From: Mytilus californianus
Lineage: Eukaryota
DNA length: 64,000 nt
Direction of reading: 5' to 3'
Assembly: GCF_021869535.1 (NCBI RefSeq)
Contig: NW_026262668.1
Span: forward strand, 132,618,001 to 132,682,000
This document shows positions 8,669 to 63,500 of the stretch, in pieces (within the stretch, counting starts at the first letter, position 1; every line of letters starts with the position of its first letter). The position numbers and the translations under genes were made by a program. The notes under the pieces were generated by a model. It worked only from the letters and a program-made list of their open reading frames with translations, was not told the origin of the DNA and did not search any database.

Positions 8669-11600
8669 GTAAGCGATGCAAAACTTTTGACGGAATCAAA
8701 TATCGTTCAGGGGATGATGCCTTATTATCTCCATAAAAATATGCCAATGCTAATACAAATACATACCAAATATCCATTGACTTATCGTTAGTAGTCCCCA
8801 TTTAAAAAAAATTACTTGATCACAAATTCGAAGAAAAAAAATGTTGACGCCGCCGGCGCCACCAGAAACAGCACGCCTCTATTACTTCGTAGAGAAGAGA
8901 CAAAAAATATTAATACTAACATTTTTCGCTCTCTTATATCTGAAAAATCTTTATTTGATGTAATGTTATTACAATTTTTACGAATTATGCATGAAGATTA
9001 AAATGGCCAAGAACTGCATTCAATAGGTTGAAATGTGGAAAGTAAGAACATAATTTTTTAGTTGCGAACTAGGAATCGTTTTTCTTTTCCATTACTTAAA
9101 GTAAGTTTTATTTTCAAGCGATCATCTATTTCCATGCTCAAAAACTCGTGACTAGAATTATGATATTATCCAAACACATTTCTAAGTAAACACATTAAAT
9201 GTACACATTTCTTGAATATAAACAATATTAAATGTGTTTTAGAATTAAAAGTTTTTAGGACTTAAATATGCACTATTTCTAAGTTAAACATGATCATAAA
9301 CACAATTCTATACACTTTCTTCAATCTAAACATGTTACGAAATTAAACATGTTAAAAAAGTGCGCAAACAATGCATATGTATTTAGAATTGTGTTTAGGA
9401 TTTATACACCATTTAAACAGATTACATGTAGTAAGGATATCGGAAATGCATTTTTTGGACGTGTTCATATAGAAATGTAATAGATGTTATGTCGATGCCT
9501 ACAATTTGAAGGAAAAATCGGGCCGTCTATACAGCATGACTTGATTTTATCCTTCGCATATAAAAAAGTATAACAAAAACATCAAACTCCAAGGCAAATT
9601 CAAAAAGTGAAAGTCCATAAAACTAACAAAATCAAACGCTATCAATCAACGGAACAAGTGAAAAACTTCTGACATATAACTTTTAACTAATACAAATATG
9701 TTTGAAGAACAATTAGGATTTCTTTAGATGTCCCAAAAGTTCATTTTAACAGTAAGCAATGGGCTAAGACTGATACCTCATATAACATGAAACGTATAGT
9801 TACAATAAAAACATACCGCAACTACATTAAAAAAATATCGCATTCTACAATAAAATAAATATCATTTAATTATTTATTTACAAAAGAAAAACGTTGCAGT
9901 ACAATTTTTACAAGGAAATAAACTTTTGCTTTTACTTTGATATTGAGCTTATTTCAAGACTTAATTTTCGTTTATATTTAAATGATAGGTTAACCGCGTA
10001 TATGTTCACAAAGAAATCTTACATTGTTGCTCGTTTAACTGGTCCATTTGACTTTTTTCCCTTTAAAATGGCCTCGAAAGGCTTAATATAGTCGATTTCA
10101 CACTCTATTTATTAATGGTAATGCAAAAAACTATTCTGTGTGTCGCGTGAATTAATTTCGGACTGAAAGTATTTATATATTTTAATATTAAAAAAAATCT
10201 ATTGCAAAAAAAAAACATCTTTTTCCTCATGGAGTGTCTGTATATTTACAATTTCATATTAGAAAATATCGCCACTCCACATAAGAAACGGTTTTCTCGA
10301 TTCGCACTTTCCATAGACTGATGTATAGGCATCCTAAATCACACAAGAAACTTTATAATTATCGTTTTATATTTACATCCATAAATCAATCAAAATATTT
10401 CGGTTCTTTTGGCTTGTGCTCTAACAATCGTTTAGCAACTCGTTATCAAATTTCATTCCACTGATTATGCTTATATAGTAGGTATTTACTATTCATTGAT
10501 AGTAATAAACACTCTACCTGTCTTTGAAAAGGATACGTTCCTATGAAGTTGAAATTATCTCCGCTGACACGGAGTCCTTGTTGTGTTTTACTACACTATC
10601 ACATACTTATGAAACATTAATTTTCATATCTGATACAATGGTCTTTCTATAATCTGAGATTACTTATATCTACTCTTTTTTAGTACAATAGAAATTTATT
10701 CAATTCGACTAACTCTTCGTTAATACAACGTTAATAGTGACCGACGTTCTTTTTTAGACCGTGGTTTGTAAATTTCTGGTGATAATCTTCATACAAGATA
10801 ATAAATCGGGATGAATTTTGTCTTCCTGTTTTAAATTGTCCATTGCTTGAGGGCTACTGTTGCCCGTTGGCTGTACATTTCGTAGTTGGCTCAATAATCA
10901 GCATTTGGAGTATGGTCTCTAGTTCCGATGAAAACAATATTTTTCTGACTAAAAACCGTTTACAGCAAGGATAAAGATATACTTATTTGGTAAAAAAAAA
11001 ACTTTTACTAAATTTTACCACATGTGAATATATTCATTATTGAAAAATGTTTCCACCATGCATTAGAATTATAATAAAAAAATTGAATTTCACATGCAAT
11101 TTTTACTTTGATATTATTAATAAAGGTACCACATTTATCAAATTTAAGAATTGACCTTGAAATCTTTTGAAAAACTTTTGATAGGTTTCAGTTAATTTGT
11201 TGTTGTTGAATCATTGTGTCTAAAGGTATTATTGGGTACGAATATCAATTCAGCTATTTTTTTTTCAAGCAAGACAACTTAAGTGCACCTTTTCAGATTC
11301 AGATTGTTGCACTGTTGTTGATTAACATTTATTCTGAAAGACAGTTATGGATTAGGAATTGGGACACAGACACATCGTATCAGTAAACCCATTCGTGATG
11401 TAAAATATATGTAGTGTCGATTTCAGTCGTTCTTCTTCAAAATTTGCTTAGAGTTTTAACAGATTAAGACAAATAACAGCACTAGAATTGTCCTTATTCA
11501 ACCAGATATTCATGTTTCCGCCCAAAGAAATGAATCTTGTTAGTGATTGACGTATGTCATATTCTGATAATGTTTCTTTTGATATAGAGGGGATATGGTG

Positions 11601-14600
11601 TTGATTGCAGATCTTTGCAATATCGATGACAATCTAGAGCTTAACACATAGTATAGACACATGTTTATGTTGCGCTCTATCTGTCTTTTGGTTGATTCGT
11701 GTATTTAAGTTACCGTCTCATTGACATACACCTCACATCTTCTGTAATCATACTTACATACTTGCTCTTTAATCTTTTATGGAGCAGTAATCTCATTGGA
11801 ACAGTTCTTTGTGTATCATTAGTTGTACCTTTCGATACCGTACAAATGAACTGCTACAAAACAATAAAAAACTGAGTTGTAAAGGAACCCATTGTCATAC
11901 CGAAAAAGAGGTTATATTGGATAAGGGAGAAATTAAGCTTCGTAATATGCCATCGATGAACCTTTCAAAGAATTGTAACTCTCTGCGTGAGCTTTTGTGC
12001 CAGAAGGCAGAAGTCTCGGCGACCAAACTTCTTTTACCCGGTCAACGTGTGCAGTTTGATAGCGTAAAAGTGTGAACAAACCCAAGATAAGAATTTAAGG
12101 GAACTCAGTGCAAATGCCACCTTATCGATTTATATGAAGATACGATATGTCTTTAAATATTACATCATGTAAGAAGAACAAGTGCAGACTTTTGATAAAG
12201 AACCATGTTGATTCGAAGAATAGTTCATTATTGTTTTATTGATAAAAATATTAAACAGATTTATTTACCTCAATTTTTTTCAATCTGATTTTCTTAGACA
12301 AACACAAAACTGAAAGTCTCTATATTTAGGTGCATTTCAATAGCTGCGACATATGGAACATCGGAAAGAGAAAAAAGAGTGCCCTAGACTTTACCGAATT
12401 AAACGAAGCAACAAGGCAGGCACAAAAAAAAAGGTTTTAACGTCACATTCCGAACGTACGTGGATGCGAATGTATACATCCCGCACAGTCAAACGGACGC
12501 CCCACTTTAGCAATGAGTTTACTGTCGGAACCGGAGAAGTCCAGTGATGGCAATTTTTCTATACTCCAGTCAACCATTATGTTATCATGAATCATCATAC
12601 CCATTAGATTAGAGGTAACAGTAGTTTACCCATATTCAAATGTCATACATCTGTTTAGAAGTTACAGATCAAGTTAAAAAAATAACTGAGAGGATCGCAT
12701 GAACGCCAAACTGGACGAGACCGGGTGTGTCTCCAAATATGCATGCATCACCTGCTATGCGAATCTTTGACCATTAATCAAACCGTCATAAGAAAAATCT
12801 CATAACTCTTCCAAAAAATCATCGAATCAAAATGGCGGTGAGGTAAATTTTCGAACATTTTGTGTCAAATGAGTAGTGATTACAGTGTCTAAGCATTCTG
12901 CAATAGACAGAATATGGCCAAAGTCACAAAACTCCTACTGAAATGTTTACATCATAGCGTAGAATCATCTACAAATCATGTCAACACTCCTACTACTAAT
13001 AATTATGAAATCTTTTGAACAAACGTTCGCCAATAAGTAGCGTTCACAACATGTGAATAGGCCAAAAATTGTCAAGGTTCCATATTGCTAAATTAAAATG
13101 GTGATATAGTATGTAGACTATATAGAACAAGTATACATGTCTCAAAATATAAAATGTATTTTTTCATGGCTTAGAAACAGGTAGAATACGAAGCTTTGCC
13201 GATCATTTAATCACTATTTCTCAGAAAATTGGGACCATTTGCCAAAATTATACTTGGAAAAAATTTGTGTAAACAAACTTTAAATTATGCGCAAATGATT
13301 CATATATATATATATATATGATTTGAAAGATTCCAAATTGGTTGATCTTAGCTCTTACTGTAAAAATAATACCGATGGTCAAAACTATGGGTCACTTTTT
13401 TCCACATAACAGATACGTTACCGTCATGTTTTATTACCTTAGCAAACGAACTCTCATACAAAGTGTCATTGATTCAATTTTTTCCTCCAAAACTATTCTG
13501 GAGGTACCTAACGTTCTATTAATAGTCATAAATCTTGATGAAAGACTTTTAAAAATTTATAATTTGTTCTTGAATCCATATCTTGATCAAATACAACTGT
13601 GAAGACAGAAAAACATAATGATTAGTTGTTCTTAATAAAAAATGTATCAAGATATTAATCCAAATATTTTAAAATAGCAATTATCAACAACTGCTCTTGT
13701 TAATTTCATATATTTTTTCAACTGTTTATATATCTTATCTTATTTTCAACTTGGAAATGAACATATCACGTATCTGTTCAGAAAACGACTTTGATATTGA
13801 AAACTCTGTTATATCGATTCTGGAACTTTTAATTTTAAATAAGCTTTTAAAAATATATAATATTTGAAAAAAGAAGTAAGCGTAACGCATAAAACTTTAA
13901 CGAAATCAATAAAATATAAGATGTAACGTACCCGTTCAAGGTATGCAACAGATACGTTACCATAGGAAACAAATATGTTACTCAATGTTTGCAACCTGAA
14001 CATTACTTTTATCCTGTAGGTAACAAATTCAAATGCCTAATTCTTATCTACGTGTTAAAATGTCTAATTTGGTATATTAGCGCAATATATATTACAATAT
14101 CCAGTTAAAAGCAGTACAATCACCTCATTTGACGTTGTCCTTCAAAAATCTTCGAAAGTTGCAGCTCATAACTTGTTGCATTGATGATATTATTGAAATT
14201 TAACATTAAACAAAACAAAAAGATATTAAGCAGGTAGCTCATATGTCTGAATTCCGAAATGGAAGCGGTATTTCATCGTTATTCAAAACATGGTAACGTA
14301 TCCTTTAGTACCGTATCTGTTTAACAAAATATTCTTAGTCTTTTATTTCAAATATTGTTCTAATAACAGGACATTTTCTACTGTTGAAAAGAAAGGTCAA
14401 ATATGTAAACACATATTTATACAGTTAAATGGATCCCGTGCAAGTGGTTAATTTTTAAGCGAAAGATTCCATAGTATCGTATATGTTCAAAATTACCGTG
14501 AAAAAGCCATTTCCCAGTTTAGTAGCTTATTAATTTTCTTATCGTTATAAATACACATAAAATAATTTTGTTTTGGTTACAACTATGGAAGCAACATAAC

Positions 14601-17697: not shown

Positions 17698-17965
17698 ACC
17701 TGATGTTCAGTGGTTGTCATTTGTTGATGTGGTTCACAAGTGTTTCTCGTTTCTCGTTTTTTTTATATAGATTAGACCGTTGGTTTTCCTGTTTGAATGG
17801 TTTTACACTAGCCATTTTTGGGCCCTTTATAGCTTGCTGTTCGGTGTGAGACAAGGCTTCGCGTTGAAGGCCGTACTTTGACCTATAATGGTTTACTTTT
17901 ACAAATTGTGACTTGGATGGAGAGTCGTCTCATTGGCACTCATACCACATCTTCTTATATCAATA
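17698..17965 (-). mobile_element. Abundant SINE-like dispersed repeat, family A
   Basis: Reverse complement of GATGTGGTATGAGTGCCAATGAGAC..; copies at 21700-22345, 24300-24535, 26490-26640 (-) and 29918-30075, 46293-46375, 58245-58440, 61305-61640 (+). Confidence 0.8.
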
Positions 17966-27402: not shown

Positions 27403-28080
27403 AGGGGCATTAGCTACGAGATATACAAAAAAAATATTTTTTTTTTTATTCAATCATTAATGAAAGTAAAAGAGTGAAATAATAATTCGCTTTTAGCAGC
27501 CAGTTTGGTTCAATTTTGTCAAAATAAGCTAAGAAACATAGCTGATGAATTATTCACTTGCAAGTGAATAATTCGACCTCATTGAATCCGTATTCATGTG
27601 ACCTTCAATTTAACCCCTTAGCTGGAGATGGGTTACGCATGTATTCAGCTATAAAAAGGAAAAGAATGTCAACATTGAAAGTGAAACAAGGATGAACCAT
27701 TTGGTTGACTGATTTGATCCACAAAAAAATCATTCTTAAACAAGTAAAAACGAAGATAAGCATACTTTTCAACCTACAATATGAAATCAAACAGACCTAG
27801 AAAATCCAATTACACGTGGTCGCTATCTATTTATATTCATATTCATGTTTATATCGGGTTGTATGACCGTCGGCAGTCTTCGGAGGTCATATCGATAGTT
27901 AATTAGATGGCGTCTAGACTAAAATAAACACGAAATGCTGATACATATTATCGAGTCTATGCATTGTTAATTGTTTATTTTAAACTTTTTGTAATTTGGA
28001 TATATTTTTCAGTATGTTATAAATCAAATATGAGAATTTGAGTCAAATCGTTGAACATGAATTTGACAGCTAATGCCCCT
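27403..28080. mobile_element. Kolobok-like non-autonomous element (TTAA TSD)
   Basis: TTAA|AGGGGCATTAGCT ... AGCTAATGCCCCT|TTAA; a second, 3'-only copy at 58441-58791. Confidence 0.88.
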
Positions 28081-28139
28081 TTAAAAGTCACCAGCTCATA
28101 ATTTACTCTTCGTTTTAGTTACATGAACTAAGTAGATAT

Positions 28140-29917
28140 CACAGTGTAGATACTATTCTGTACGCTATCCGGAAGTCGCGATTTTCGAAGCGAGAACTTT
28201 TTGAATCACATTTTAAATTTGATGGATATACTGAATTAAACGGTAAGTTGATCATCTGTACATTGCTTAATGATTAATTCAGCTGACATCGATATTCTCA
28301 AATGGTTTAGAATTAAATTCATCACATTTATTATTCGTATCTTTGCCTTAATCGAGAGATTTTCAAGTGCATCACTAAGGAAAATCAGTCGGTGAACCTA
28401 AAAACAATCTTTTTACCCTCTTAGTGTACAAATTAACGTAAAAACCAGCGACTCTTTTCACAAAAAATCTTAAGAGTAAAAATACTCGTAAGTCATACAC
28501 ATTTCAGTATAACTTACGATCAATTTTAATCGTAAGATTTTTTGTGAAAAGAGTCGCAGACGTAATTACCTAAATGAAGTATATTTCAAGTGGTGGTAAA
28601 AGTTTCAACCAGATCTTTGAAGCCAGAAATAAGAAAATTACACTTGTTTGAATTTCTCACTGTACGATCAGTCTCGCTTGTATATTTTGAAACTGTATGA
28701 TCAGTCTTTATTTCACTGTATTCTAGTGGTGATTTCAAAGTTATTTACGATACATTAGAAGGTGGCATTTTTCTAAATAACACAAATATATTTCAATAAA
28801 TTCACATCCTGAAAACTTATGAAACATGTTTTAGCTTGATGGGGTGTACTCGACTTACTACATTAAGTATAAGGATGTTTAAATGTTGCTAAAATAAGAG
28901 GAAGGTTTGTTGTATATATAAGTTTCAGAAATGTCCTCCGTTATACTTAAAATTGTACAAACACACAGATTTAATTGTTATATAAAAATGCATGTATTTA
29001 CACACATTCGAGGCCGTACTGTAGCCTAAATTGATCACAGTTCCTTCACTTTGTTTTGGATGTAGAGCTGTCTCTTTGACACTCAATTGTACACCACTTT
29101 GTAAAGCGGGGGTTTATAGTGATAATGAAGTCCGTCTTTCCGTTGGACCGGTACAATATGTTTCGTCGGTTTTGTAAGTGCATCTCCTCATAAACCACTT
29201 AATATACATTGTGGGTTCCAGCCATTTTTAAATGGAGAGGGGGTCCAATCCAGGAGAAAAGGGATTCCAAATATATGTTCCCATACAAATGCCGTCTACA
29301 AAAATCATCAGAAATATATTTGTATTGTCTGATGAAAGAAATTACACGTTATAGTTCCCTGGACAGTTCATAATATCACATAGACACGTATATACCTTCA
29401 AATTGCCGTTGTTTCTTTTTCAAAATCACGACTGGTCATACAGTCAAAAAATCTGAAATCGCTTCTAGAATACAGTCAGTTCTAGACTGATCGTACAGTA
29501 ATTTATTTTGGGATCCTCAAGGAAAACATATTTTTTATGGGAAATACGAATATTCTACTTAAATACGAAAAGAATATTGAAACAGTATATATTTAATTGT
29601 AAACTGATGCAAATATTTGCATTAAAAGATTATTTGCTTTGTACTACGAGAGCAAAATTGTCCATTGATTTCACTTTTCTATCAAGTTGGTGTGATGCAC
29701 ACGTATATTTTATATTCTTATGCATGTTTTTGTTACAGTTACTCATATTTATGATGCTATACATACCTTGAAGATGTTCAAAGCACTTTATAGATATAGG
29801 AGTAAACAAATGATGAGAAAAGTCACCGTAGGCAAAACCGTTCTGTTAGCCAGTTGGAAATCATCGCTTCGAAAATCGCGACTTCCAGATAGCGTACAGA
29901 ATAGTATCTACACTGTG
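28140..29917. mobile_element. Transib/RAG-type non-autonomous transposon, CACAGTG termini, 5-bp TSD GATAT
   Basis: 54-bp TIRs with 1 mismatch (28140-28193, 29864-29917); GATAT at 28135-28139 and 29918-29922; inserted in the head of a family A repeat whose uninterrupted form is seen near 46297. Confidence 0.9.
28449..28556. mobile_element. Harbinger-like MITE (108 bp), TSD CAG
   Basis: CAG|CGACTCTTTTCACAAAAAATCTTA ... TAAGATTTTTTGTGAAAAGAGTCG|CAG. Confidence 0.8.
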
Positions 29918-31710
29918 GATATAGGAAGATGTGGTATGAGTGCCAATGAGACAACTCTCCATCCAAGTTACAATTTATAAAAGTAAACCATTATAGGTCA
30001 AGGTACGGCCTTCAACACGGAGCATTGGCTCACACCGAACAGCAAGCTATAAAGGGCCCCAAAAAATTACTAGTGTCTTTTTATAATCATTAAGGTTTTC
30101 AAATCATTTCAATCATTTTATCATGGAATTTATTGTTTGCGATATTACTGAAAGAACTGTTATTTTTCAAAAATAATTTATAAACTCTTCTTTGATAATG
30201 CGATTGATTTGTTAAGCTAATTCCAAAATGTCTCTTGATATTTTTCATGTTCAGGGAAATTTGGTCACAGACTTCTTTTCATACCTTTTCCCTTTCTGTT
30301 TCACCATTTTCTAAATTTAGATGGAAATGAGTAAAAAGATTTCTATAGTATCCATTGTCAGGAAATATATTTACATGAAAACAGTATTTTAACAATGGTA
30401 TATAGTTCATAACTCGAGTCTGAGAACCATGGTTTATAGTTTGACTGATCACTATATATAATCATTTGAACAAATGTAGTGAATGCAAGAGCAGTGTCAC
30501 ATAGTATGAAGTTAAATTTTTTCCACAGCTGTTTCATAGTTAGCTTGCTCGTCATTAACAAAAATCACATAGTCTCTGTTTCAAATCAGAACTTTAATTT
30601 TTTGTAATATAGCAACGAATTGCTTTTTTTATCCCAATTAATTTTGCCTGGTAATGGATCTAACTTAACCCTTTCATTGTTACATCTATGAAAACAGGTA
30701 AGTTAAAAATAACGGATGGGAAAATGGTCTGGAATTGGAGTGTAATATTTAACCATAAAGTTTCTAAATGCATTCTATCAAACTAGAAGACACCAGTGTG
30801 AAGTCAACAAGCTGACTACAGCAATTGTATGATAAACGTGTGCGTTTACCCATAGAGTCTCCGATTGTCCTTCCGTTTAATATTTTGAGTCCTGATTCTT
30901 GACATAAGTCAATTAATAATTCTCCACTCTTGTTCGGAATTTTCTGAACAAATTTTTTTCAGTATAATTTAGACTACATGGTAGTTGGGATAAACCTTAA
31001 AATATAGAACTTCTGACATACACAGTAAAACCGCCAGGCCCTCGTATGACTTTTTTCTCGTTTTTTTTTTAAATTGGAACCATTACGTAAAAAATCATAT
31101 CCATTTTTTTATCAACAGGGGTTTACCACTCCATGTTTTAACAAAAATTACATTATGCATTTGTGTTACAACATTTACAAATTCATGTACATGTTCACTG
31201 ATTTTTTTCTCAGTTGTCAGACCCTGAATAATCCGGATGCATGCCAATGTTTATGATGTTATCAAAAGAACTTAGTCTCGGCATTTTTTGATTCAAAAAA
31301 ATATTCAAATTTTATCGACTAACAAATATAAGTTATAAGGTTATATATGCTGGGTAGTCCTATAATATCGGCGATAAAAATACGTTGACAGCAAACGATA
31401 TGGGCCTATGGACCTACGAAGGCTTAGACTGATAAGAGGACTAATATGCTGGTATGATCCGTATAAAGCTAGTCAATGAAATCATGACTTAAATCAAGGA
31501 TTTGTTTATCAAGATCTCTCTATACAAATCCTTGTTTAAATTTAACTTTAATTTATTGAAAAATAAACTATATTTTTGTTTCTTTCTTTTCTTCAAATGC
31601 TAATTAAGCATTTTCATGACAATAAAAAGAAAATTAGATCTTATAAATGTGCCAATAATATGAACAATAAAAAATATTTATGAACTAGATAAGTCACTAT
31701 TTAGATCTGA

Positions 31711-40746: not shown

Positions 40747-43700
40747 ATGATTCCGAAATGGTGGTGTCTGATGATTGTATTTTCAGCCTTTATGATTCAA
40801 GTGATATCATTTGGTACAGCGGGAGCCATTGGATTGTACAATATAGAATTTATAGAATACTTCAACGTTGGAGCAGCTGAAGTCTCCTTGATTGGTTCCA
40901 TTAACCTTGGTGTTTTCCTAGGAGCAGGTATATTGTGAAGGAATTTTTTAAAGATAAAACTGAAACATATATTCACTTTTTAAAAATTTTATAGGCAATT
41001 TGAATCAGTTTAATTTTTCAGTGTATGATGTATAACATCAAAAGCATGAAAAGGACTGGTAGAAGACTTCAACACCTAGACAATAGAATTTTAACCCATT
41101 TGATCAAGGTCAATGTGAGCTTTTGACGTCTTTTGTTTATAAACTTTTTTTTTCAAATATGTTCTCATATTAAAATAATGAACCAATTGAAATAAAACTT
41201 CACGGAACTGATCCTTAGGATCTCTAGTTTAAAGTGGATGTTGAGTCAAATAACCAACATGTCCACCATATAAAAATAGAATGTAAGGATAAAATGCAAA
41301 TAATTAAAAAAATAAAAAATAAAAGGTACAGAAAATTTTATGTGTTTCAAAAATGTTTTAACTAACTGCCCTTCATATCCTTATAGGACATATTGCCCAT
41401 TGATTGGAGATTTTTCACTAACTGTAGTGTTTTTGCCTAGCCTGTTATCTTAAAAACTAGCAATTATCTTGCAAGTACTTTTGTGAGTTACTTAATTGAC
41501 ATTTATACTTGCGAGTCCTTTTGTGAGTTTGCTTAATTGACATTTATACTTGCAGGTCCTTTTGTGAGTTTACTTAATTGACATTTGTACTTGCAGGTCC
41601 TTTTATGAGTCTGCTTTATTGACATTTATACTTGCAGGTCCTTTTGTGAGTTTACTGATGAGACATTTAATTGCAGGTCCTTTTGTGAGTCTGCTTTATT
41701 GACATTTATACTTGCAAGTCCTTTTGTAAGTTTACTGATGAGACATATTTAATTGCAGGTCCTTTTGTGAGTTTACTAATGAGACATATGAGTTACAGAA
41801 GAGTAGCTGTCATTGGGAGTTTACTCAGTACTATTAGTTTGCTGTGTGTTCCATTTTTAGATAATATCATCTATCTGTATATTATATATGGAATATTTAC
41901 AGGTGAGGGCAATAATACGATGATCACATTAATGTTCACTTCATTTGTGATGTCACTATGATGTCATTAACTTGTCAAAATTGATCCATATAAACCAAAA
42001 AGAAATTGTACTCGCAGGATTGAAGATAAATTGCTGAAAATGTATTTTTGATTAAGATGTTACTCATATTTTAAAATTAATGAAAAAGTCTCAAATAAGC
42101 TATTGGCAGTTTTTGCAATTTTCCTGTAAATAGATTTATTTGTCAAATAGGGATTATCATTCTTTGAGTAATAATTGAAATTATAACATGATATGAAAGC
42201 AATATAGAATTTGCTTCTGTTGCGATTGCATGGAAAATATTTTGGCTCTTGATATATCCCCGTTTTTTAACAGGTTTAGGATTTGCTATGGTATACCTAC
42301 CATCAAGTGTGTTAGCAGGCCTGTATTTCAATGAACATCGGAGTCTTGCTACTGGTATTGCAACAAGTGGATCTGGCATAGGAGCAGTAATATTTCCATT
42401 ATTAGTACACAGTTTGATCCAGTATTATGGCTGGAAGGGGTCAGTTTTCATCCTTGCTGGACTCAGTTTACAATGCATTGTATTTTCTGCTTTATTATTT
42501 CCACTGGCAGAAATACCAAACAGGGGAGAACTGATGTCAGTGTTGACAAACAGCAATATACATGACAAACAAACAAATAATCATGAAATTGACCACATGA
42601 TGACCAATGGTAAATGTGAGAATTACAATGGTCACATAAGTATATCAGAGAATGACAAAACAGTTCAGGAAAATGGTGAAGTCACAAAATTAATGGAAAA
42701 TTTTGAGCCTGAAGCTGAAAAAAGTTTAAAGCATTGCTATGTTTTATGTGATTTTTCTTTCTTTATTTTCTTTCTTAATAACATACTTTGGAACATGGGA
42801 GTTGCAATTTCTTGGATCCTTGCTCCAGAGTACTTTGTATCAATGGGATTGACCAAAGAAAATGCAGCTACTATTTTAACATTTGGTGGAGTTGGTTGTT
42901 TCATTGGTTGTATAATTGGTGGAGGACTGGGAAACATACAAAGCCTAAGTAGATTGTCTATGTATATATCATGGAATATTGCAGTAGGAATATTGATAAT
43001 GTTCTTGCCATTTAAAATTTTTCAATCAGTTGAAATTTTGTCATTGATAATGTTTTTAAATGGACTTGGATTTGGAGGAATTTTAGGACTACTAGTCATT
43101 TTTACAGTTGATCTGCTGGGTGAAAAAGCTTTGGGTGATGCTTTTGGATATTTGATGCTCAGTAATGGTGTAGGATCTATTATTGGTCCACCACTCGGAG
43201 GTGAGTAAACCTATAGAGCTATTATAAGTCCATTAATTGAGGGTGGACTATCTACAAGTTTGAGATTTATCTACCATTAAAGGATGGTTACTTTATAAAA
43301 AGATTTTATTAGGCCATTCTTATAGTTAATTACTTTAAAGAGCATTTTTTTCCCACATTCAGAGATGAGTTAACATACAGATCTTTTGTTAGTTCACATA
43401 TTGACACCCCTAAACAAATATGACAGTCGCCTTATAATTTCCCAAGATTGAATAGACTGTTTGGAAGCTTCAATTAAATAGATTTATAATTGTATTATGA
43501 AAAAAAGTAGCACATACATGTAGGGGTCTTAAGATATCCTCCAAAGTTCCAACTCGACTAATGAAATTCATCTCCTTAGAAAAGCATAATAAAAAACATA
43601 AGAAATAGCAAATCTTAAAACACAAAAAAAGTGTTGTAAAGTTTGAATGATTAATGTTGTTTATATTTAGTGTAAGCATATTTTACAATTAATTCAAGTC

Positions 43701-45283: not shown

Positions 45284-46419
45284 TTAATTTAAAATAGTTG
45301 GTATCTTGCTCTCCTCTAAGTTATATATTTCAAAAGCAGTTATAAACTTAAGAAAGTAATTTTGATACATATTTTAATGAAATTTTTGATATTAATACAA
45401 TGTTTCTTTACTTCTCATCTAAATAGTTTGGTCCCACAAGAATTATTGGACTTTTAATCTCCAAAAACTATGGAAACAGTAAACAACTTTTTGGAAATGT
45501 CCCTTCTCTTATATATGCTCGGGAATGGAAGGAAATTAACACAGTTGTTTATCATCATGTATACCTTCTTTGTCAAGTTTGGATTAGTTCTGAGGAGTTA
45601 TTGGACTGATAGCTTTGTTCAGTCATTTTTCTAGATCAGTTAAAACTATAAGTGACCTACTGATATTGACACATTTAGATCAATTTATCTATTGAAGATA
45701 ATGCTAATCTTTCTAAAGAATTGCTGTAATTCAACTATCTATATATATAGTTGTGCCATGTCAAGTGTTTTTGTATACCACCACCATACCTCAAAATACA
45801 TAAAATGAAATCCTACCATCCTACCTGAAAGAATAAATATGATTTAATAGAAACTCTTCCAATCTTCCAAACATTGATTTTGATGTCTTTGCTTTATTAT
45901 GTATTTTACTTCAGCGACATATGGCTTAGATAGGCAAAGCTAGTATTGGTCAACATTGTACCTCTGGGTTTTTTCGGAGGAGTAGGGTGTTGGTTGTTGG
46001 TGGGGTTGGTTGTTCTAACCAATATTTTAAGTGACTCCTGTTGGTTTTTTATGTACTATGCAGTTTCATTTTGTATCAGTCTCAAGTTTTTTTTCATCCA
46101 TTTTACAAGTAATTTTTAGAGAGCTCTAAGCATGTACTTTTTTTAGGACAAATCAAGTGATACATTCTAGATAGTAAAATGGGTATGTTTGTGCGCATGT
46201 AAAATGGTTTAACCCCTCTACATTTTGTTTCTGTACCCAGTCAAACAAGCTATCTCAGCCATGTGTTGTTCCTTGTTGTTTTTCTTTGTTTGTATATAGA
46301 TATAGGAAGATGTGGTATGAGTGCCAATGAGACAACTCTCCATCCAAGTTACAATTTATAAAAGTAAACCATTATTGTATATCTGTTTGTTGTTTTTGTT
46401 TTGTTATTAGGAAGAGTCT

Positions 46420-46640
46420 TGTGTTGGTGGCTGATGTTGTCTGTTGTGCTTCAGTATTGTTGGTGGCTGATAATGTCTGTCGTACTGTCCAGTTTTGTTG
46501 GTGGCTGATGTTGTCTGTTGTGCTGTCCAGTATTGTTGGTGGCTGATAATGTCTGTTGTACTGTCCAGTATTGTTGGTGGCTGATGTTGTATTGTCCAGT
46601 ATTGTTGGTGGCTGATGTTGTCTGTTGTACTGTCCAGTAT
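46420..46640. repeat. Minisatellite, about 38 bp unit (TTGTTGGTGGCTGATGTTGTCTGTTGTACTGTCCAGTA)
   Basis: About 6 units. Confidence 0.9.
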
Positions 46641-47671
46641 TTTTTGTGATATCTGTTATCCTTTTTATGTATTTTGACTATCTTTGATTGAGAAGGTGGT
46701 CATCAAATCCCACCTCTATTGCTTTTATATTTATAAGGGCATTGTCAAGTAGAATAAACTTGTAATTTGTTTGTGAATGAAATTTGTTGGTAAATAATTT
46801 AGTTACTAGCAGTCAATAAACTTTGTCAGTTTAACTTACATTATTACTGCTATTAAAACAATATTGTAACTTTCTTCTATCTTTTCTTGTAATACTTGAA
46901 GGTAGGAAAAGAACATATTTTATTATGAGTTTGATTGTAAATTTTAAGTTTATGATTGTTTTTATACTGGAACTAAAGTTTCAGACAAGTTTCAACCCTT
47001 AGGCACTTTTGGGTGTTATTTTTTCGAAAAACTTGAAATACTGATATTGTACATTGTTGCATAGTCATCAATTAAATTGCACTGGTTTATTTTTATGTGT
47101 TAGTCTGTTATCCTATTTTTTAAGCAGAATTTAAGTCTACATTGCTGTTTTAGTGATTTTGAATTTTTTATAGTGATCAACTATTATTTTTCTAATTATT
47201 TTTTTACGTTTTATAACAAACTAATACTATTGGATAAGTGTTTAGTATGCTGTTCCATTAGCAGTTGTAATTAGAACATAAAGAAGTCAGGTAGACATAT
47301 TTTTTCTGTAAAAAAAAAAACCTTTAAATGAATTGTTTCATCTGTTTTTGCTGTAAAAAATAAAATAACAAAAATACCAAACTCAAAGGAAAATTCAAAA
47401 CGGAAAGTTTCTTGTCAAATGGCAAAATAAAAAGCTCAAACATATCAAACAAATGGAAAACAACTGTCATATTCCTGACTTAGTACAGGCATTTCCTTAT
47501 GTCTCTTTGACACATTCCCCGTTTCCATTCTCAATTTTATTAATAGCATGAGTGTTGAAATAGTCCATGGATGGGGAAAGGAAGATAACTTTACTTTTCT
47601 ATGCACATCAATTGGCTATTTTAAACAGGTTTGAAAATATATACAACAGGAGTTTATTATAGGACGTGCAC

Positions 47672-47974
47672 AACATGTGTCAGAAGAAATTCTTGACATT
47701 CAGTTGCATAGCTATGTTCTGCATGCAGTGTACATATCGATATGTCAAGCAACATATGTCAGAAGAAAGCCTTGACGTTCAGTTGCGTAGCTAGGTTCTG
47801 CATGCAGTGTGCATATCGATATGTCAAGTAACATGTGTCAGAAGAAAGCCTTGACGTTCAGTTGCATAGCTAGGTTCTGCATGCAGTGTGCATATGGATT
47901 TGTCAAGCAACATTTGTCAGAAGAAAGCCTTGACGTTCAGTTGCGTAGCTATGTTCTGCATGCAGTGTGCATAT
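47672..47974 (+). repeat. 79-bp tandem array, left part (4 units)
   Basis: GAC core at 47695, 47774, 47853, 47932. Confidence 0.92.
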
Positions 47975-48343
47975 AGATAAGATATATTTTTGCTGTATGT
48001 TTTAATTGGTATCAATGAAGCATATTGTTTAATATTCTGCAATTTATTCTGTAATTTTTATGAAAGTCCTATTATGTAGGAAACAGTAACTGTATGAACT
48101 TGTACTATACTAGTCTGAAACCTATTCATAATTGAGGCAAATAAATTTTAATTCACAATTGCATTTAATTAAGTAAAGTAAGAACAATTACAATGATATG
48201 ATTTTTCTAGAAATATTGTATTACTGTCATTTGAATATTTGATAAACAATTTGAAATTCATGTTTATAATTTACCAGTTTATAGTAAAAATCCACTGAAT
48301 AATCCACATCTAAATGTCGTCTGCCATTTAGGCCATGCGGTCA

Positions 48344-58440: not shown

Positions 58441-58791
58441 TGTTTCGATCCACAAAAAGTCATTCTTCTACAGGTAAAAACGATGATTAACATACATATT
58501 TTTAATCTATAATATGAAATCAAACAGACATAAAAAAAAATCCAATTGCACGAGTTCGCTATCTATTTATATCTATATTTATTTTTATATCGGGTTATAT
58601 TACCGTGGGTAGTCTTCGGAGGTCATCTCGATGGTTAATAAGATGGCGTCTAGACTGAAATACACACAAAATGCTGAAACGTATTATCGAGTGCATGCAT
58701 CGTGAATTGTTTATTTTATACCTTTAATAATTTGAATATACGTTTTAGTATCTTATAAATCAAATATGAGAATTTGACAGCTAATGCCCCT
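58441..58791. mobile_element. 3' half of the Kolobok-like element
   Basis: Matches about 27720-28080 and ends GACAGCTAATGCCCCT|TTAA. Confidence 0.8.
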
Positions 58792-58962
58792 TTAATGTAA
58801 CAAAAAATCTGTCAGTGTGCAAGTATGATAATTTGTTGCACTCAAATGTAATTAATTGGCTCTGAATTTCAAATAATTTGCCTAGGCGAGCACTGTGTTC
58901 TAATGATTTTAGTTATCCAATTATTCCCTTTTTCATTCTAATCAACAGCAATAGAAATATCT

Positions 58963-60524: not shown

Positions 60525-63500
60525 ATGATACCAAAATGGTGGTGTCTGATGATTGTATTTTCAGCCTTTATGATTCAAGCGATATCATTTGGTACAGCAG
60601 GAGCCATTGGATTGTACAACATAGAATTTATAGATTACTTCAAAGTTGGAGCAGCTGAGGTCTCCTTGATTGGTTCCATTAACCTTGGTGTTTTCCTAGG
60701 AGCAGGTATAATATAAGGATTTTAAAAATATAAAATTGAAAGATATATTCACCTATTTAACATGTTTAGAATTTTATATGAAATTTTAATCAGTTTAATT
60801 TTTCAATTTATGATGTAAAAAAATAATCAGAATGGACCAGTAGAAGACTTCAACACCTTTACAATAAATATTTAACCCATTTGGCCAAGGTCAGTTTGAG
60901 CTTTTGACATCTTTTGTCCTTAAACTTTTTCAAATATATTCTCATCTGAAAATAATGAACCAATTGAAATGAAACTTCACAGAAGGATCGCTAGTTAAAG
61001 TTCATTAATTTTATTGAGTCCAATAACCAACATGTTGACCTGGCATATATGAAATAGAATGCAAGTATAAAATGCAAATAATGTTCTAATATCTATAAAA
61101 AAAAAAAACCAGAAAATCTGCTGTGTGGCAAAAATGTTCTATCTAACCTCCCTTTGTATCCTTATAAGACATATATTGCCCATTACTTTAGTGTGTATTG
61201 CCTGTTAACTTAAAAACGAGAAAACGAAAGATCCTGTAAACAGCAAAATTGATTAGCAATACAAGATCTACCAAAATGCTACATGACTGAAACAATTAAT
61301 TATAAATAAGAAGATGTGGTATGAGTGCAAATGAGACAACTCTCCATCCAAGTTACAATGTATAAAAAGTTAACAATTATATGTCAAAGTACGGCCTTCA
61401 ACACGGAGCCTTGGCTCACACCGAACAGCAAGCTATAAAGGGCCCCAAAATTGACTAGTGTAAAACAATTCAAACAGGAAAACCAACGGTCTAATCTATA
61501 TAAAAACCGAGAAACGAGAAACACCTATGAACCACACCAACAAACGACAACCACTGATCAACAGGCTATGGACTTAGGACAGGTGCATAAACATGCAGCG
61601 GGTTTACACGTTTTAACAGGCGCCAACCTTCACTTTGTCTACTTATAGGTTTAATTGACTTAAATGACAGAAATTATCAGTATTGGTGTAATTGCCCTTA
61701 AATAACTTTTGATTTACCAATAATTATACCTGTCTGTCTGTCTGTGTGTCTGTTTATTCATTATGTAGAACTCCACAGTAACTTGTGTGGTTTTGGATTT
61801 TGGCCCCAATGAATATTTAATATAAAAGTTATTTGCACTAAAATTCATTTTTGGATAGCTGGAGATTATTATAACCTTGAAACTGGATTCATATGAACAT
61901 AAGGTTGTGTAATGTATTTATAATTTACTGTTTCATGTTTGCATTGACAGTCCATATTTTCATATCAGACATAGATCCAGAAATTATCGTAATGTTTTTT
62001 TTTCACTTTTTTTTAACTAACTTTGTGTGTTTACGAAAAAATGAGGTGAAAAGCACTAAATTTTTTTTATCCTTTAATAGTTAAAAGTCAATACTCTCTG
62101 AATAGGTATCTCTCTATTAAAAGTGATTGAAATTCTACTTTGAACCAAATCTTGGGGGAATATTTGACATTTTCATGCTCCTTTTTGTAATATTTTATGG
62201 CAAATAAATGCAGAATGTTGCCATGGAAACACAAAAAAGAAATTTTATTTCACCATTCTCACTATTAAAAATTAAATGTACGGAAAATACTGATATATTC
62301 ATATGTACATGTATGGCACTAACAGATAACTTAATTTATTAGAAAGCCAGGAAAAGCGGATGGTTTAACATTTTGTGGGTCAATTTTTAAAAACTGTTCA
62401 GATGAGAGATTTCTGCTAATTAGAGCCTTTAGTACACTTATAATTCTAAATTTGAGTCTTTTTGTGAGTTCATTTATTTTCCTGGATTGAGGGAAACTAA
62501 AGTTTGTGGTTTTGACAGATTCTGCATACAATCCCATTGGAAATAGTTTTGTTTTTTTTAACACACCATGAACAATTATAACCCAATGAATCCACAGTTT
62601 ATACTTTTTAGTTATTTTGTGTATTTATTTAAATGACATATTTACTAGCATGTCCTTATGTGAGGTTACTTAAATGACATATTTACTAGCATGTCCTTAT
62701 GTGAATCTACTTAAATGACATATTTACTAGCAGGTCCTTGTGTGAGTTTACTTAAATGATATATTTAATTGCAGGTCCTAATGTGAGTTTACTTAATTGA
62801 CATATTTTATTGCAGGTCCTTATATGAGTTTACTTAAATGACCTATTTACTAGCAGGTCCTTGTGTGAGTTTACTTAAATGACATATTTATTAGCAGGTC
62901 CTTATGTGAGATTACTTAAATGACATATTTACTAGCAGGTCCTTGTGTGAGTTTACTTAAATGACATATTTACTAGCAGGTCCTTATGTGAGATTACTTA
63001 AATGACATATTTACTAGCAGGTCCTTGTGTGAGTTTACTTAAATGACATATTTACTAGCAGGTCCTTATGTGAGTTTACTTAGATGAAATATTTAATTGC
63101 AGGTCCTTATGTGAGTTTACTTAAATGACATATTTACTAGCAGGTCCTAATGTGAGTTTACTTAATTGACATATTTTATTGCAGGTCCTTATATGAGTTT
63201 ACTTAAATGACATATTTACTAGCAGGTCCTTGTGTGAGTTTACTTAAATGACATATTTACTAGCAGATCCTTATGTGAATTTACTTAAATGACATATTTA
63301 CTAGCAGGTCCTTATGTGAGATTACTTAAATGACATATTTACTAGCAGGTCCTTATGTGAGATTACTTAAATGACATATTTACTAGCAGGTCCTTATGTG
63401 AGTTAACTTAAATGACATATTTACTAGCAGGTCCTTGTGTGAGTTTACTTAAATGACATATTTACTAGCAGGTCCTTATGTGAGATTACTTTAATGACAT

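What the first reader, a model, noticed from the sequence alone, without database searches (positions are those of the whole stretch)
28140..29917. Young transposon with exact RSS-heptamer ends (CACAGTG) and a 5-bp TSD
Seen: 54-bp TIRs differing at one base, both beginning CACAGTG, a perfect GATAT duplication, and the empty target (TAGATATAGGAAGATG) visible in another repeat copy near 46297. Established: CAC termini with 5-bp TSDs characterise Transib and RAG-like transposons, and CACAGTG is the V(D)J heptamer. No nonamer at 12/23 spacing and no transposase ORF are present, so it is non-autonomous. Inference: a Transib/RAG1-like transposase was recently active in this genome.
Basis: partly seen in the sequence, partly recalled or inferred. 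Interest (0 to 1): 0.72.

Follow-up and report, generated by a model that had tools for sequence, protein, structure and literature searches.

The report
Orphan mussel transposon with RSS-like ends
This is a real but gene-less jumping element of a Mytilus mussel (about 48 copies) whose ends and 5-bp footprint look like those of Transib/RAG transposons. No enzyme that could move it, RAG-like or otherwise, could be tied to it, so it is an ordinary orphan repeat and not evidence for a RAG-like transposase.

Summary
Window 28140-29917 has 54-nt inverted ends (one mismatch) that begin CACAGTG, and it is flanked by GATAT on both sides.

- **Family:** the genome holds 95 such ends, about 48 copies. 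30 of 31 independent insertions have a perfect 5-bp duplication, each one different. The consensus is 1,671 bp with no coding capacity. Copies lie 0.5-2% from it, and no pair is closer than 1.08%, so this was one past burst.
- **Window copy:** it carries a private nested 108-bp hairpin MITE.
- **"Empty site" at 46297:** this is another copy of a 159-bp abundant repeat. The element landed in the first five bases of such a copy.

- CAC ends with a 5-bp duplication are the Transib signature, but there is no A-rich nonamer and the targets are AT-rich, not GC-rich.
- No copy with these ends carries a gene. Every longer copy is the same element with unrelated nested insertions.
- Pfam RAG1 finds nothing in the genome (best E 2.7).
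- This scan followed up this family before on other DNA (s1-307196) and named a P-like parent. I could not reproduce that. P-like relatives from metagenome contigs have CATAGAT ends, with 7-bp duplications in six of eight copies checked.

The mobilising enzyme remains unidentified.

The parts
28135..28139 (.). Left copy of the 5-bp target-site duplication, GATAT.
   Evidence: It equals 29918-29922. The same repeat carries GATAT only once in its other copies.
28140..28193 (+). Left terminal inverted repeat, 54 nt, starting CACAGTG.
   Evidence: I1, 98% complementary. There are 95 such ends genome-wide.
28140..29917 (+). Whole non-autonomous element. It is 1,778 bp here against a family consensus of 1,671 bp.
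   Evidence: about 40 copies at 96-99% identity; consensus, 0.48% divergence of this copy; no coding capacity.
28449..28556 (.). Nested 108-bp palindromic mini-MITE, private to this copy and flanked by a 3-bp CAG duplication (28446-28448 and 28557-28559).
   Evidence: I2. In one search the other copies lack query 310-417. In one search the joint 28445->28557 appears in all four runs, and this bin is about 200 times deeper than the rest of the element. One search aligns the window copy against the consensus.
28675..28748 (.). Left arm of an internal, imperfect inverted repeat. Its partner is 29423-29499. It is part of the family consensus.
   Evidence: I3/I4, 74-77% complementary. Read depth there equals the rest of the element, so it has no independent copies.
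29423..29499 (.). Right arm of the internal inverted repeat.
   Evidence: I3/I4.
29864..29917 (-). Right terminal inverted repeat, 54 nt, ending CACTGTG on the + strand.
   Evidence: The T at the position that pairs with TIR position 31 is the family consensus.
29918..29922 (.). Right copy of the 5-bp target-site duplication, GATAT. These are also the first five bases of the target repeat.
29918..30076 (+). Hyper-abundant ~159-bp repeat that was the insertion target.
   Evidence: copies at window 17961, 46299 and 61306 and in many loci. (very high depth, with loose ends at 29918-29921).

Best explanation
The element is one copy of a low-copy (about 48), non-coding, cut-and-paste DNA transposon family of a Mytilus mussel.

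Shown:
- 54-bp terminal inverted repeats begin with CACAGTG.
- The target-site duplication is strictly 5 bp and AT-rich.
- There was a single amplification burst. Copies lie about 1% from a 1,671-bp consensus.
- This copy inserted into the first five bases of an abundant 159-bp repeat, and a 108-bp hairpin MITE later inserted into it.
- No copy in the assembly that carries these ends has a gene.

Inferred: a DDE transposase supplied in trans bound the TIRs, cut at the CAC/flank boundary, and joined the ends to target phosphates staggered by 5 bp. From the CA..TG ends and the 5-bp duplication, the most likely enzyme is a Transib-like member of the CACTA-Mirage-Chapaev-Transib (CMCT) clade. That enzyme has since been lost, is unassembled, or is too diverged in its own ends to be linked. 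The family is therefore an orphan, and the enzyme assignment is provisional.
For: - TIR and TSD.
- 95 ends genome-wide against 0-1 for the control.
- Perfect 5-bp TSD at 30 of 31 independent sites.
- Non-coding.
- Burst statistics.
- Family present in runs under three species labels.
- Target repeat restored by removing the element and one GATAT.
- Literature: Transib is defined by CAC ends and 5-bp TSDs (PMC1131882). CMCT lineages share CA..TG termini and 2-5 bp TSDs (PMC12730594).
- Other superfamilies fail on TSD length or end sequence: P is 7-8 bp (PMC5199201; 7 bp in six of eight copies), AcademX 3-4 bp (PMC10045372), Kolobok has RR..YY ends (PMC9587614), and hAT has G at position 3 (PMC1131882).
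Against: - No Transib or RAG1-like coding sequence was found. Pfam RAG1 gives a best E of 2.7, although that model may miss Transib.
- A bivalve-wide survey found essentially no Transib (PMC10294476).
- The TIR has no A-rich nonamer.
- TSDs are 19% GC against 33% in the flanks, whereas Transib prefers GC-rich sites.
- No TIR relative exists at 85% identity or more.
- Two earlier follow-ups of this scan report a P-like-fold enzyme for CAC/5-bp families in this genome. I could not reproduce that.
Confidence: 0.45

Rival explanations
1. The family is mobilised by a transposase that is not Transib/RAG, with a P-element-like RNase H fold, as earlier follow-ups of this scan state. On this reading the RSS-like heptamer and the 5-bp footprint are convergent look-alikes.
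For: Earlier notes s1-307196 (this same family) and s1-302645. P-like (THAP9-type) genes are numerous in this genome, some with intact ORFs of 780-893 aa. No RAG1-like gene was found. Several CACNGTG/5-bp families were flagged in this genome although Transib is near-absent from molluscs (PMC10294476).
Against: - No copy bearing these TIRs has any P-like ORF.
- No P-like match lies inside any long TIR pair.
- There is no DNA or protein similarity between the element and 30 P-like loci.
- P-like elements from metagenome contigs have CATAGAT ends, and six of the eight copies checked show 7-bp TSDs. P is 7-8 bp in the literature (PMC5199201).
- One long copy (C143, 8.4 kb) holds a nested element with a 7-bp duplication inside the right TIR. 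A nested element of that kind could be mistaken for a parent.
Confidence: 0.25
2. It is a non-autonomous RAGL element, the RAG1L-RAG2L transposon type known from oysters and some mytilids.
For: 5-bp TSD and CAC ends. RAGL pairs exist in Modiolus and Bathymodiolus (PMC7204232).
Against: The protostome RAGL TIR consensus CACTWMCAAACKTYKBB, with AAA at positions 8-10, is not matched: here positions 4-10 read AGTGTAG. Pfam RAG1 should detect RAG1L, and it finds nothing. RAGL has not been reported in Mytilus.
Confidence: 0.05
3. It is a hAT5-type element, that is, a hAT lineage that makes 5-bp duplications.
For: hAT5 is a described group with 5-bp TSDs (cited in PMC12730594). hAT is abundant in bivalves (PMC10294476).
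Against: hAT ends have G at position 3, whereas this element has C (PMC1131882). A 54-bp TIR without subterminal repeats is atypical for hAT. No hAT gene is linked to it.
Confidence: 0.07
4. The mobiliser belongs to an undescribed DDE lineage, or the element was cross-mobilised by a distant element that shares only the terminal heptamer.
For: No relative was found by TIR. The family is an orphan. The AT-rich target with weak C/G flanks fits no described profile.
Against: This is an argument from absence.
Confidence: 0.15

Closest known systems
Non-autonomous Transib families (for example Transib-N1_AG and Transib-N2_AG; Kapitonov and Jurka 2005, PMC1131882)
   Same: CAC-initiated heptamer (CACAGTG against the consensus CACAATG), a strict 5-bp TSD, no coding capacity, and mobilisation in trans.
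   Different: There is no A-rich nonamer after a 12- or 23-bp spacer. The TIR is a 54-bp near-perfect repeat. Targets are AT-rich, not GC-rich. No Transib transposase is detectable in the host genome.
Protostome RAGL transposons and their non-autonomous derivatives (Pinctada, Crassostrea; PMC7204232)
   Same: Bivalve host, CAC ends and 5-bp TSD.
   Different: The TIR consensus (CACTWMCAAAC...) is not matched. No RAG1L or RAG2L was detected in this genome.
P-superfamily elements (the Drosophila P element; the P-like elements recovered here from metagenome contigs)
   Same: Ends begin with CA. P-like genes are abundant in Mytilus. Earlier scan notes link CAC/5-bp families to a P-like fold.
   Different: P-type elements make 7-8 bp duplications (7 bp in six of eight copies) and have CATAGAT or CATGATG ends. 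No TIR or sequence link to this family was found.
hAT5 (hAT lineage with 5-bp TSDs, Repbase Reports 2007)
   Same: 5-bp duplication.
   Different: The third base of the end is C, not G. The TIR is long and there are no subterminal repeats.

Membership tests
Non-autonomous cut-and-paste DNA transposon | TIRs, a TSD of fixed length, multiple dispersed copies with different flanks, and no transposase ORF. | tested here: met
Transib superfamily | 5-bp target-site duplication. | tested here: met
   30 of 31 independent sites are perfect.
Transib superfamily | Ends begin 5'-CAC, with a heptamer like CACAATG or CACAGTG. | tested here: met
   The family consensus has CACAGTG at both ends.
Transib superfamily | 38-bp end architecture: heptamer, then a 23-bp (or 12-bp) spacer, then an A-rich nonamer (PMC1131882). 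| tested here: not met
   Positions 20-28 read TGTACGCTA and positions 31-39 read CGGAAGTCG. Neither is A-rich.
Transib superfamily | [quoted passage not shown] | tested here: not met
   TSD GC is 19%, against 33% in the flanks and 32% in the window.
Transib superfamily | An autonomous member encoding a transposase of about 700 aa that resembles the RAG1 core. | tested here: inconclusive
   No TIR-sharing coding copy exists. Pfam RAG1 gives a best E of 2.7, but that model may miss Transib, and no Transib query sequence was available.
RAGL transposon (RAG1L-RAG2L) | TIR consensus CACTWMCAAACKTYKBB with a conserved AAA at positions 8-10. | tested here: not met
   The TIR reads CACAGTGTAGATACTAT, compared with PMC7204232.
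RAGL transposon (RAG1L-RAG2L) | A RAG1L gene in the genome. | tested here: not met
   PF12940 search of the whole genome: one candidate, E 2.7.
P superfamily | 7-8 bp target-site duplication. | tested here: not met
   This family makes 5 bp. P-like elements from metagenome contigs make 7 bp in six of the eight copies checked.
P superfamily | A P-type transposase (RNase H fold with a GTP-binding insertion) in a copy that shares the ends. | tested here: inconclusive
   None was found.
hAT / hAT5 | Ends of the form YARNG, with G at position 3. | tested here: not met
   Position 3 is C. The rule is from PMC1131882.
CACTA/EnSpm, Mirage, Chapaev | CA..TG ends with a 2-4 bp TSD. | tested here: not met
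   The ends fit, but the TSD is 5 bp.
Kolobok / KolobokP | RR..YY ends, a TTAA or 3-5 bp TSD, and long terminal direct repeats. | tested here: not met
   The ends are CA..TG and the repeats are inverted, not direct. The rule is from PMC9587614.

The most novel reading that the evidence does not exclude
Mytilus carries several transposon families with CACNGTG ends and 5-bp duplications but no RAG1/Transib-type gene. On this reading they are moved by a transposase outside the Transib/RAG lineage, possibly one with a P-like fold. That would be an independent origin of RSS-heptamer-like ends and the 5-bp footprint that are usually read as a RAG/Transib hallmark.
Probability: 0.25. Interest if true: 0.6.

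Novelty: new member of a known kind. Interest (0 to 1): 0.3.

Why it matters
CAC ends together with a 5-bp duplication are routinely used to file gene-less elements under Transib and to argue that RAG-like transposases are present. Here that signature sits in a genome where no RAG1/Transib-like gene can be found and where the targets are AT-rich. This is a caution against classifying by ends alone.

If a different enzyme proves responsible, it would show that RSS-like ends arose by convergence. If not, this is one more small, extinct repeat family of a mussel. It has no bearing on the origin of V(D)J recombination.

Tried and rejected
1. **Longer copies as parents.** TIR pairs 2.2-7 kb apart (L012, L031-L036) are the same element with nested MITEs, and one holds a 5.3-kb element that encodes a tyrosine recombinase. 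The C110 (19 kb), C143 (8.4 kb) and C99 (75 kb) pairs were read only in part. What was read shows no transposase.
2. **Diverged TIR relatives.** Patterns of 30 nt with 2 mismatches, 24 with 3 and 20 with 3 return only the family plus chance-level hits. Three near-matches, L070-L072, do not continue as TIRs.
4. **P-like route.** I took 51 PF21787 loci. None shares DNA or protein similarity with the element.
5. **Metagenome relatives.** These gave textbook P-type elements only.
6. **Presence or absence of this insertion.** Both flanks are hyper-abundant repeats and the runs are contigs, so this could not be read.
7. **Other collections.** The TIR is absent from genome contigs and viral contigs.
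8. **Subterminal binding-site repeats.** None were found.
9. **KolobokP and Academ.** Both were rejected on end sequence and TSD length (PMC9587614, PMC10045372).

Full report
**What is there.** Window 28140-29917 is bounded by 54-nt inverted repeats that differ at one base. Both begin with CACAGTG, and GATAT lies directly on each side. The 26-nt end occurs exactly twice in the window, against none expected. The element has no ORF longer than 87 aa and no Pfam domain.

**The family.** The window lies in a 1.65-Gb, 175-contig genome. A P-like ORF from that genome is 96% identical to a Mytilus coruscus protein, so the host is a Mytilus mussel.
- A whole-genome search found about 40 copies at 96-99% identity.
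- Pattern searches for the first 30, 24 and 20 nt of the end found 93-95 ends, about 48 copies. A reversed control pattern found 0-1 for the longer patterns.
- Of 33 complete copies read, 32 have a perfect 5-bp duplication. All differ except two pairs that are segmental duplicates of one insertion: L018/L030, and L024/L033, which share identical flanks. That is 30 of 31 independent sites. The exception, L029, is the most diverged copy.
- An alignment of 26 copies gives a 1,671-bp consensus. Mean divergence from it is 1.0% (range 0.5-2.0). Mean pairwise divergence is 2.0%, with a minimum of 1.08%.
- This pattern indicates one burst, with no sign of very recent activity.
- The single TIR mismatch is in the consensus itself.
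- Contigs from public runs under three species labels all hold the family.

**The window copy.** It is the copy closest to the consensus (0.48%), yet it carries a 108-bp palindromic insert (28449-28556) flanked by a CAG duplication. Other copies lack this insert, and the insert is itself about 200 times more abundant than the element. It is a nested mini-MITE with a CWG-type footprint.

**The 'empty site'.** The right flank (29918-30076) is a hyper-abundant ~159-bp repeat. Its copies begin GATATA(A/G)GAAGATG and are usually preceded by TA. The stretch at 46297 is one such copy. Removing the element and one GATAT restores an intact repeat start, so the duplication is real. The extra left-hand 'TA' match is the repeat's own context, not a shared left flank. 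The left-flank repeat ends at 28084, 55 bp before the insertion.

**The search for the autonomous partner.**
- Every TIR pair spaced 2.2-7 kb apart is the same 1.67-kb element with unrelated nested insertions. One of these is a 5.3-kb element encoding a tyrosine recombinase.
- Three longer or split copies could be read only in part, and the parts read showed no transposase.
- At up to 3 mismatches in 24 nt there are no non-family ends. At 3 in 20 the non-family hits (106) are fewer than for the control (224).
- The assembly therefore holds no element whose ends are 85% or more identical to this TIR, other than the non-coding family itself.
- Pfam RAG1 finds one candidate in the whole genome, at E 2.7.
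- A published survey of mollusc genomes that included Mytilus found one Transib ORF among 14,275 DDE elements (PMC10294476).
- RAGL pairs are known from Modiolus and Bathymodiolus but not from Mytilus. Their TIR consensus, CACTWMCAAAC..., is not matched here (PMC7204232).

**Earlier notes of this scan.** This scan followed up this same family before, on the copy at C88:55.39 Mb (s1-307196), and a foldback family as well (s1-302645). Both notes say the full-length relatives encode a P-like-fold enzyme. I treated that as a lead.
- The genome has many P-like (THAP9-type) genes. None lies inside a long copy of this family.
- None of 30 P-like loci shares DNA or protein similarity with the element.
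- Relatives recovered from metagenome contigs are textbook P-type elements of 4.5 kb with CATAGAT ends, and six of the eight copies checked show 7-bp duplications. The literature gives 7-8 bp for P (PMC5199201).
- One long copy (C143) holds a nested element with a 7-bp duplication inside the right TIR. This shows how a nested element could be taken for a parent.
- I could not read the ends of the mussel P-like families. The claim is therefore neither reproduced nor excluded.

**Comparison with known kinds.**
- CAC ends with a 5-bp duplication are the defining signature of Transib (PMC1131882) and fit the wider CMCT clade, which has CA..TG ends and 2-5 bp TSDs (PMC12730594).
- Two other Transib hallmarks fail. 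There is no A-rich nonamer after a 12- or 23-bp spacer. The targets are AT-rich: TSD GC is 19% against 33% in the flanks, with only weak C at -1/-2 and G at +2/+3.
- hAT5 also makes 5-bp duplications, but hAT ends have G at position 3.
- CACTA, Mirage and Chapaev make 2-4 bp. AcademX makes 3-4 bp. Kolobok has RR..YY ends.

**Verdict.** The element is an ordinary, extinct-looking, orphan non-autonomous DNA transposon family.
- I put a Transib-like (CMCT) mobiliser at about 45%.
- A non-Transib enzyme of P-like fold is at about 25%.
- The remainder is split among hAT5, RAGL and an undescribed lineage.
- Nothing here shows a RAG1-like transposase in this genome.

Noticed in passing
window 28449-28556: A 108-bp perfect-ended palindromic mini-MITE (arms about 51 nt) with a 3-bp CAG duplication. 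It is hugely abundant in all four runs laid. The footprint suggests a CWG-targeting Harbinger/Nuwa-type MITE.
   Followed up: partly
window 29918-30076 (also 17805-17961, 46299-46375, 61306-61461): A ~159-bp hyper-abundant repeat that begins GATATA(A/G)GAAGATGTGGTATGAGTGCCAATGAGAC and is usually preceded by TA. It is present in most loci fetched. It is probably a SINE or MITE and the most abundant feature around the finding.
   Followed up: partly
window 27710-28084 (copies at 58441-58795 and L039:4029-4350): A second abundant repeat forms the left flank and ends 55 bp before the insertion. Read contigs often join it directly to the 159-bp repeat.
   Followed up: no
L032:1343-6630: A 5.3-kb element nested in another copy of the family, with a 5-bp overlap at the junction. 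It has a 406-aa ORF that matches Phage_integrase (tyrosine recombinase), so it is Crypton- or DIRS-like.
   Followed up: partly
L021:2851-4350 (genome C143:42,008,107 onward): A ~6.8-kb element inserted 15 bp inside the right TIR of a family copy, with a 7-bp duplication (ACAGAAT). It starts CACCCGATCC. Its interior was not read.
   Followed up: partly
L108, L114, L115, L118, L140 (about 9200-13700); L120, L149; L130: Metagenome contigs (WLWD01..., VSKX01...) hold a very young P-type transposon of 4.5 kb. Copies are 99.5% identical, with 45-bp TIRs starting CATAGATTAACG. The 7-bp duplications often read GTTnGnC.
   Followed up: partly
genome C35:14,208,789-14,212,543 and four sister copies (L041-L045): A P-like family 98-99% identical across five or more copies. 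Its transposase reading frame is split into two blocks (aa 44-438 and 432-884) about 1.2 kb apart, by either an intron or an insertion.
   Followed up: no
window 42249-43208: A 319-aa open frame matching Major Facilitator Superfamily (E 3e-28). It is a host exon, about 12 kb from the element.
   Followed up: no
window 46422-46648 and 47671-47979: Tandem arrays with periods of 38 bp (6 copies) and 79 bp (3.9 copies), just after the truncated 159-bp repeat copy.
   Followed up: no
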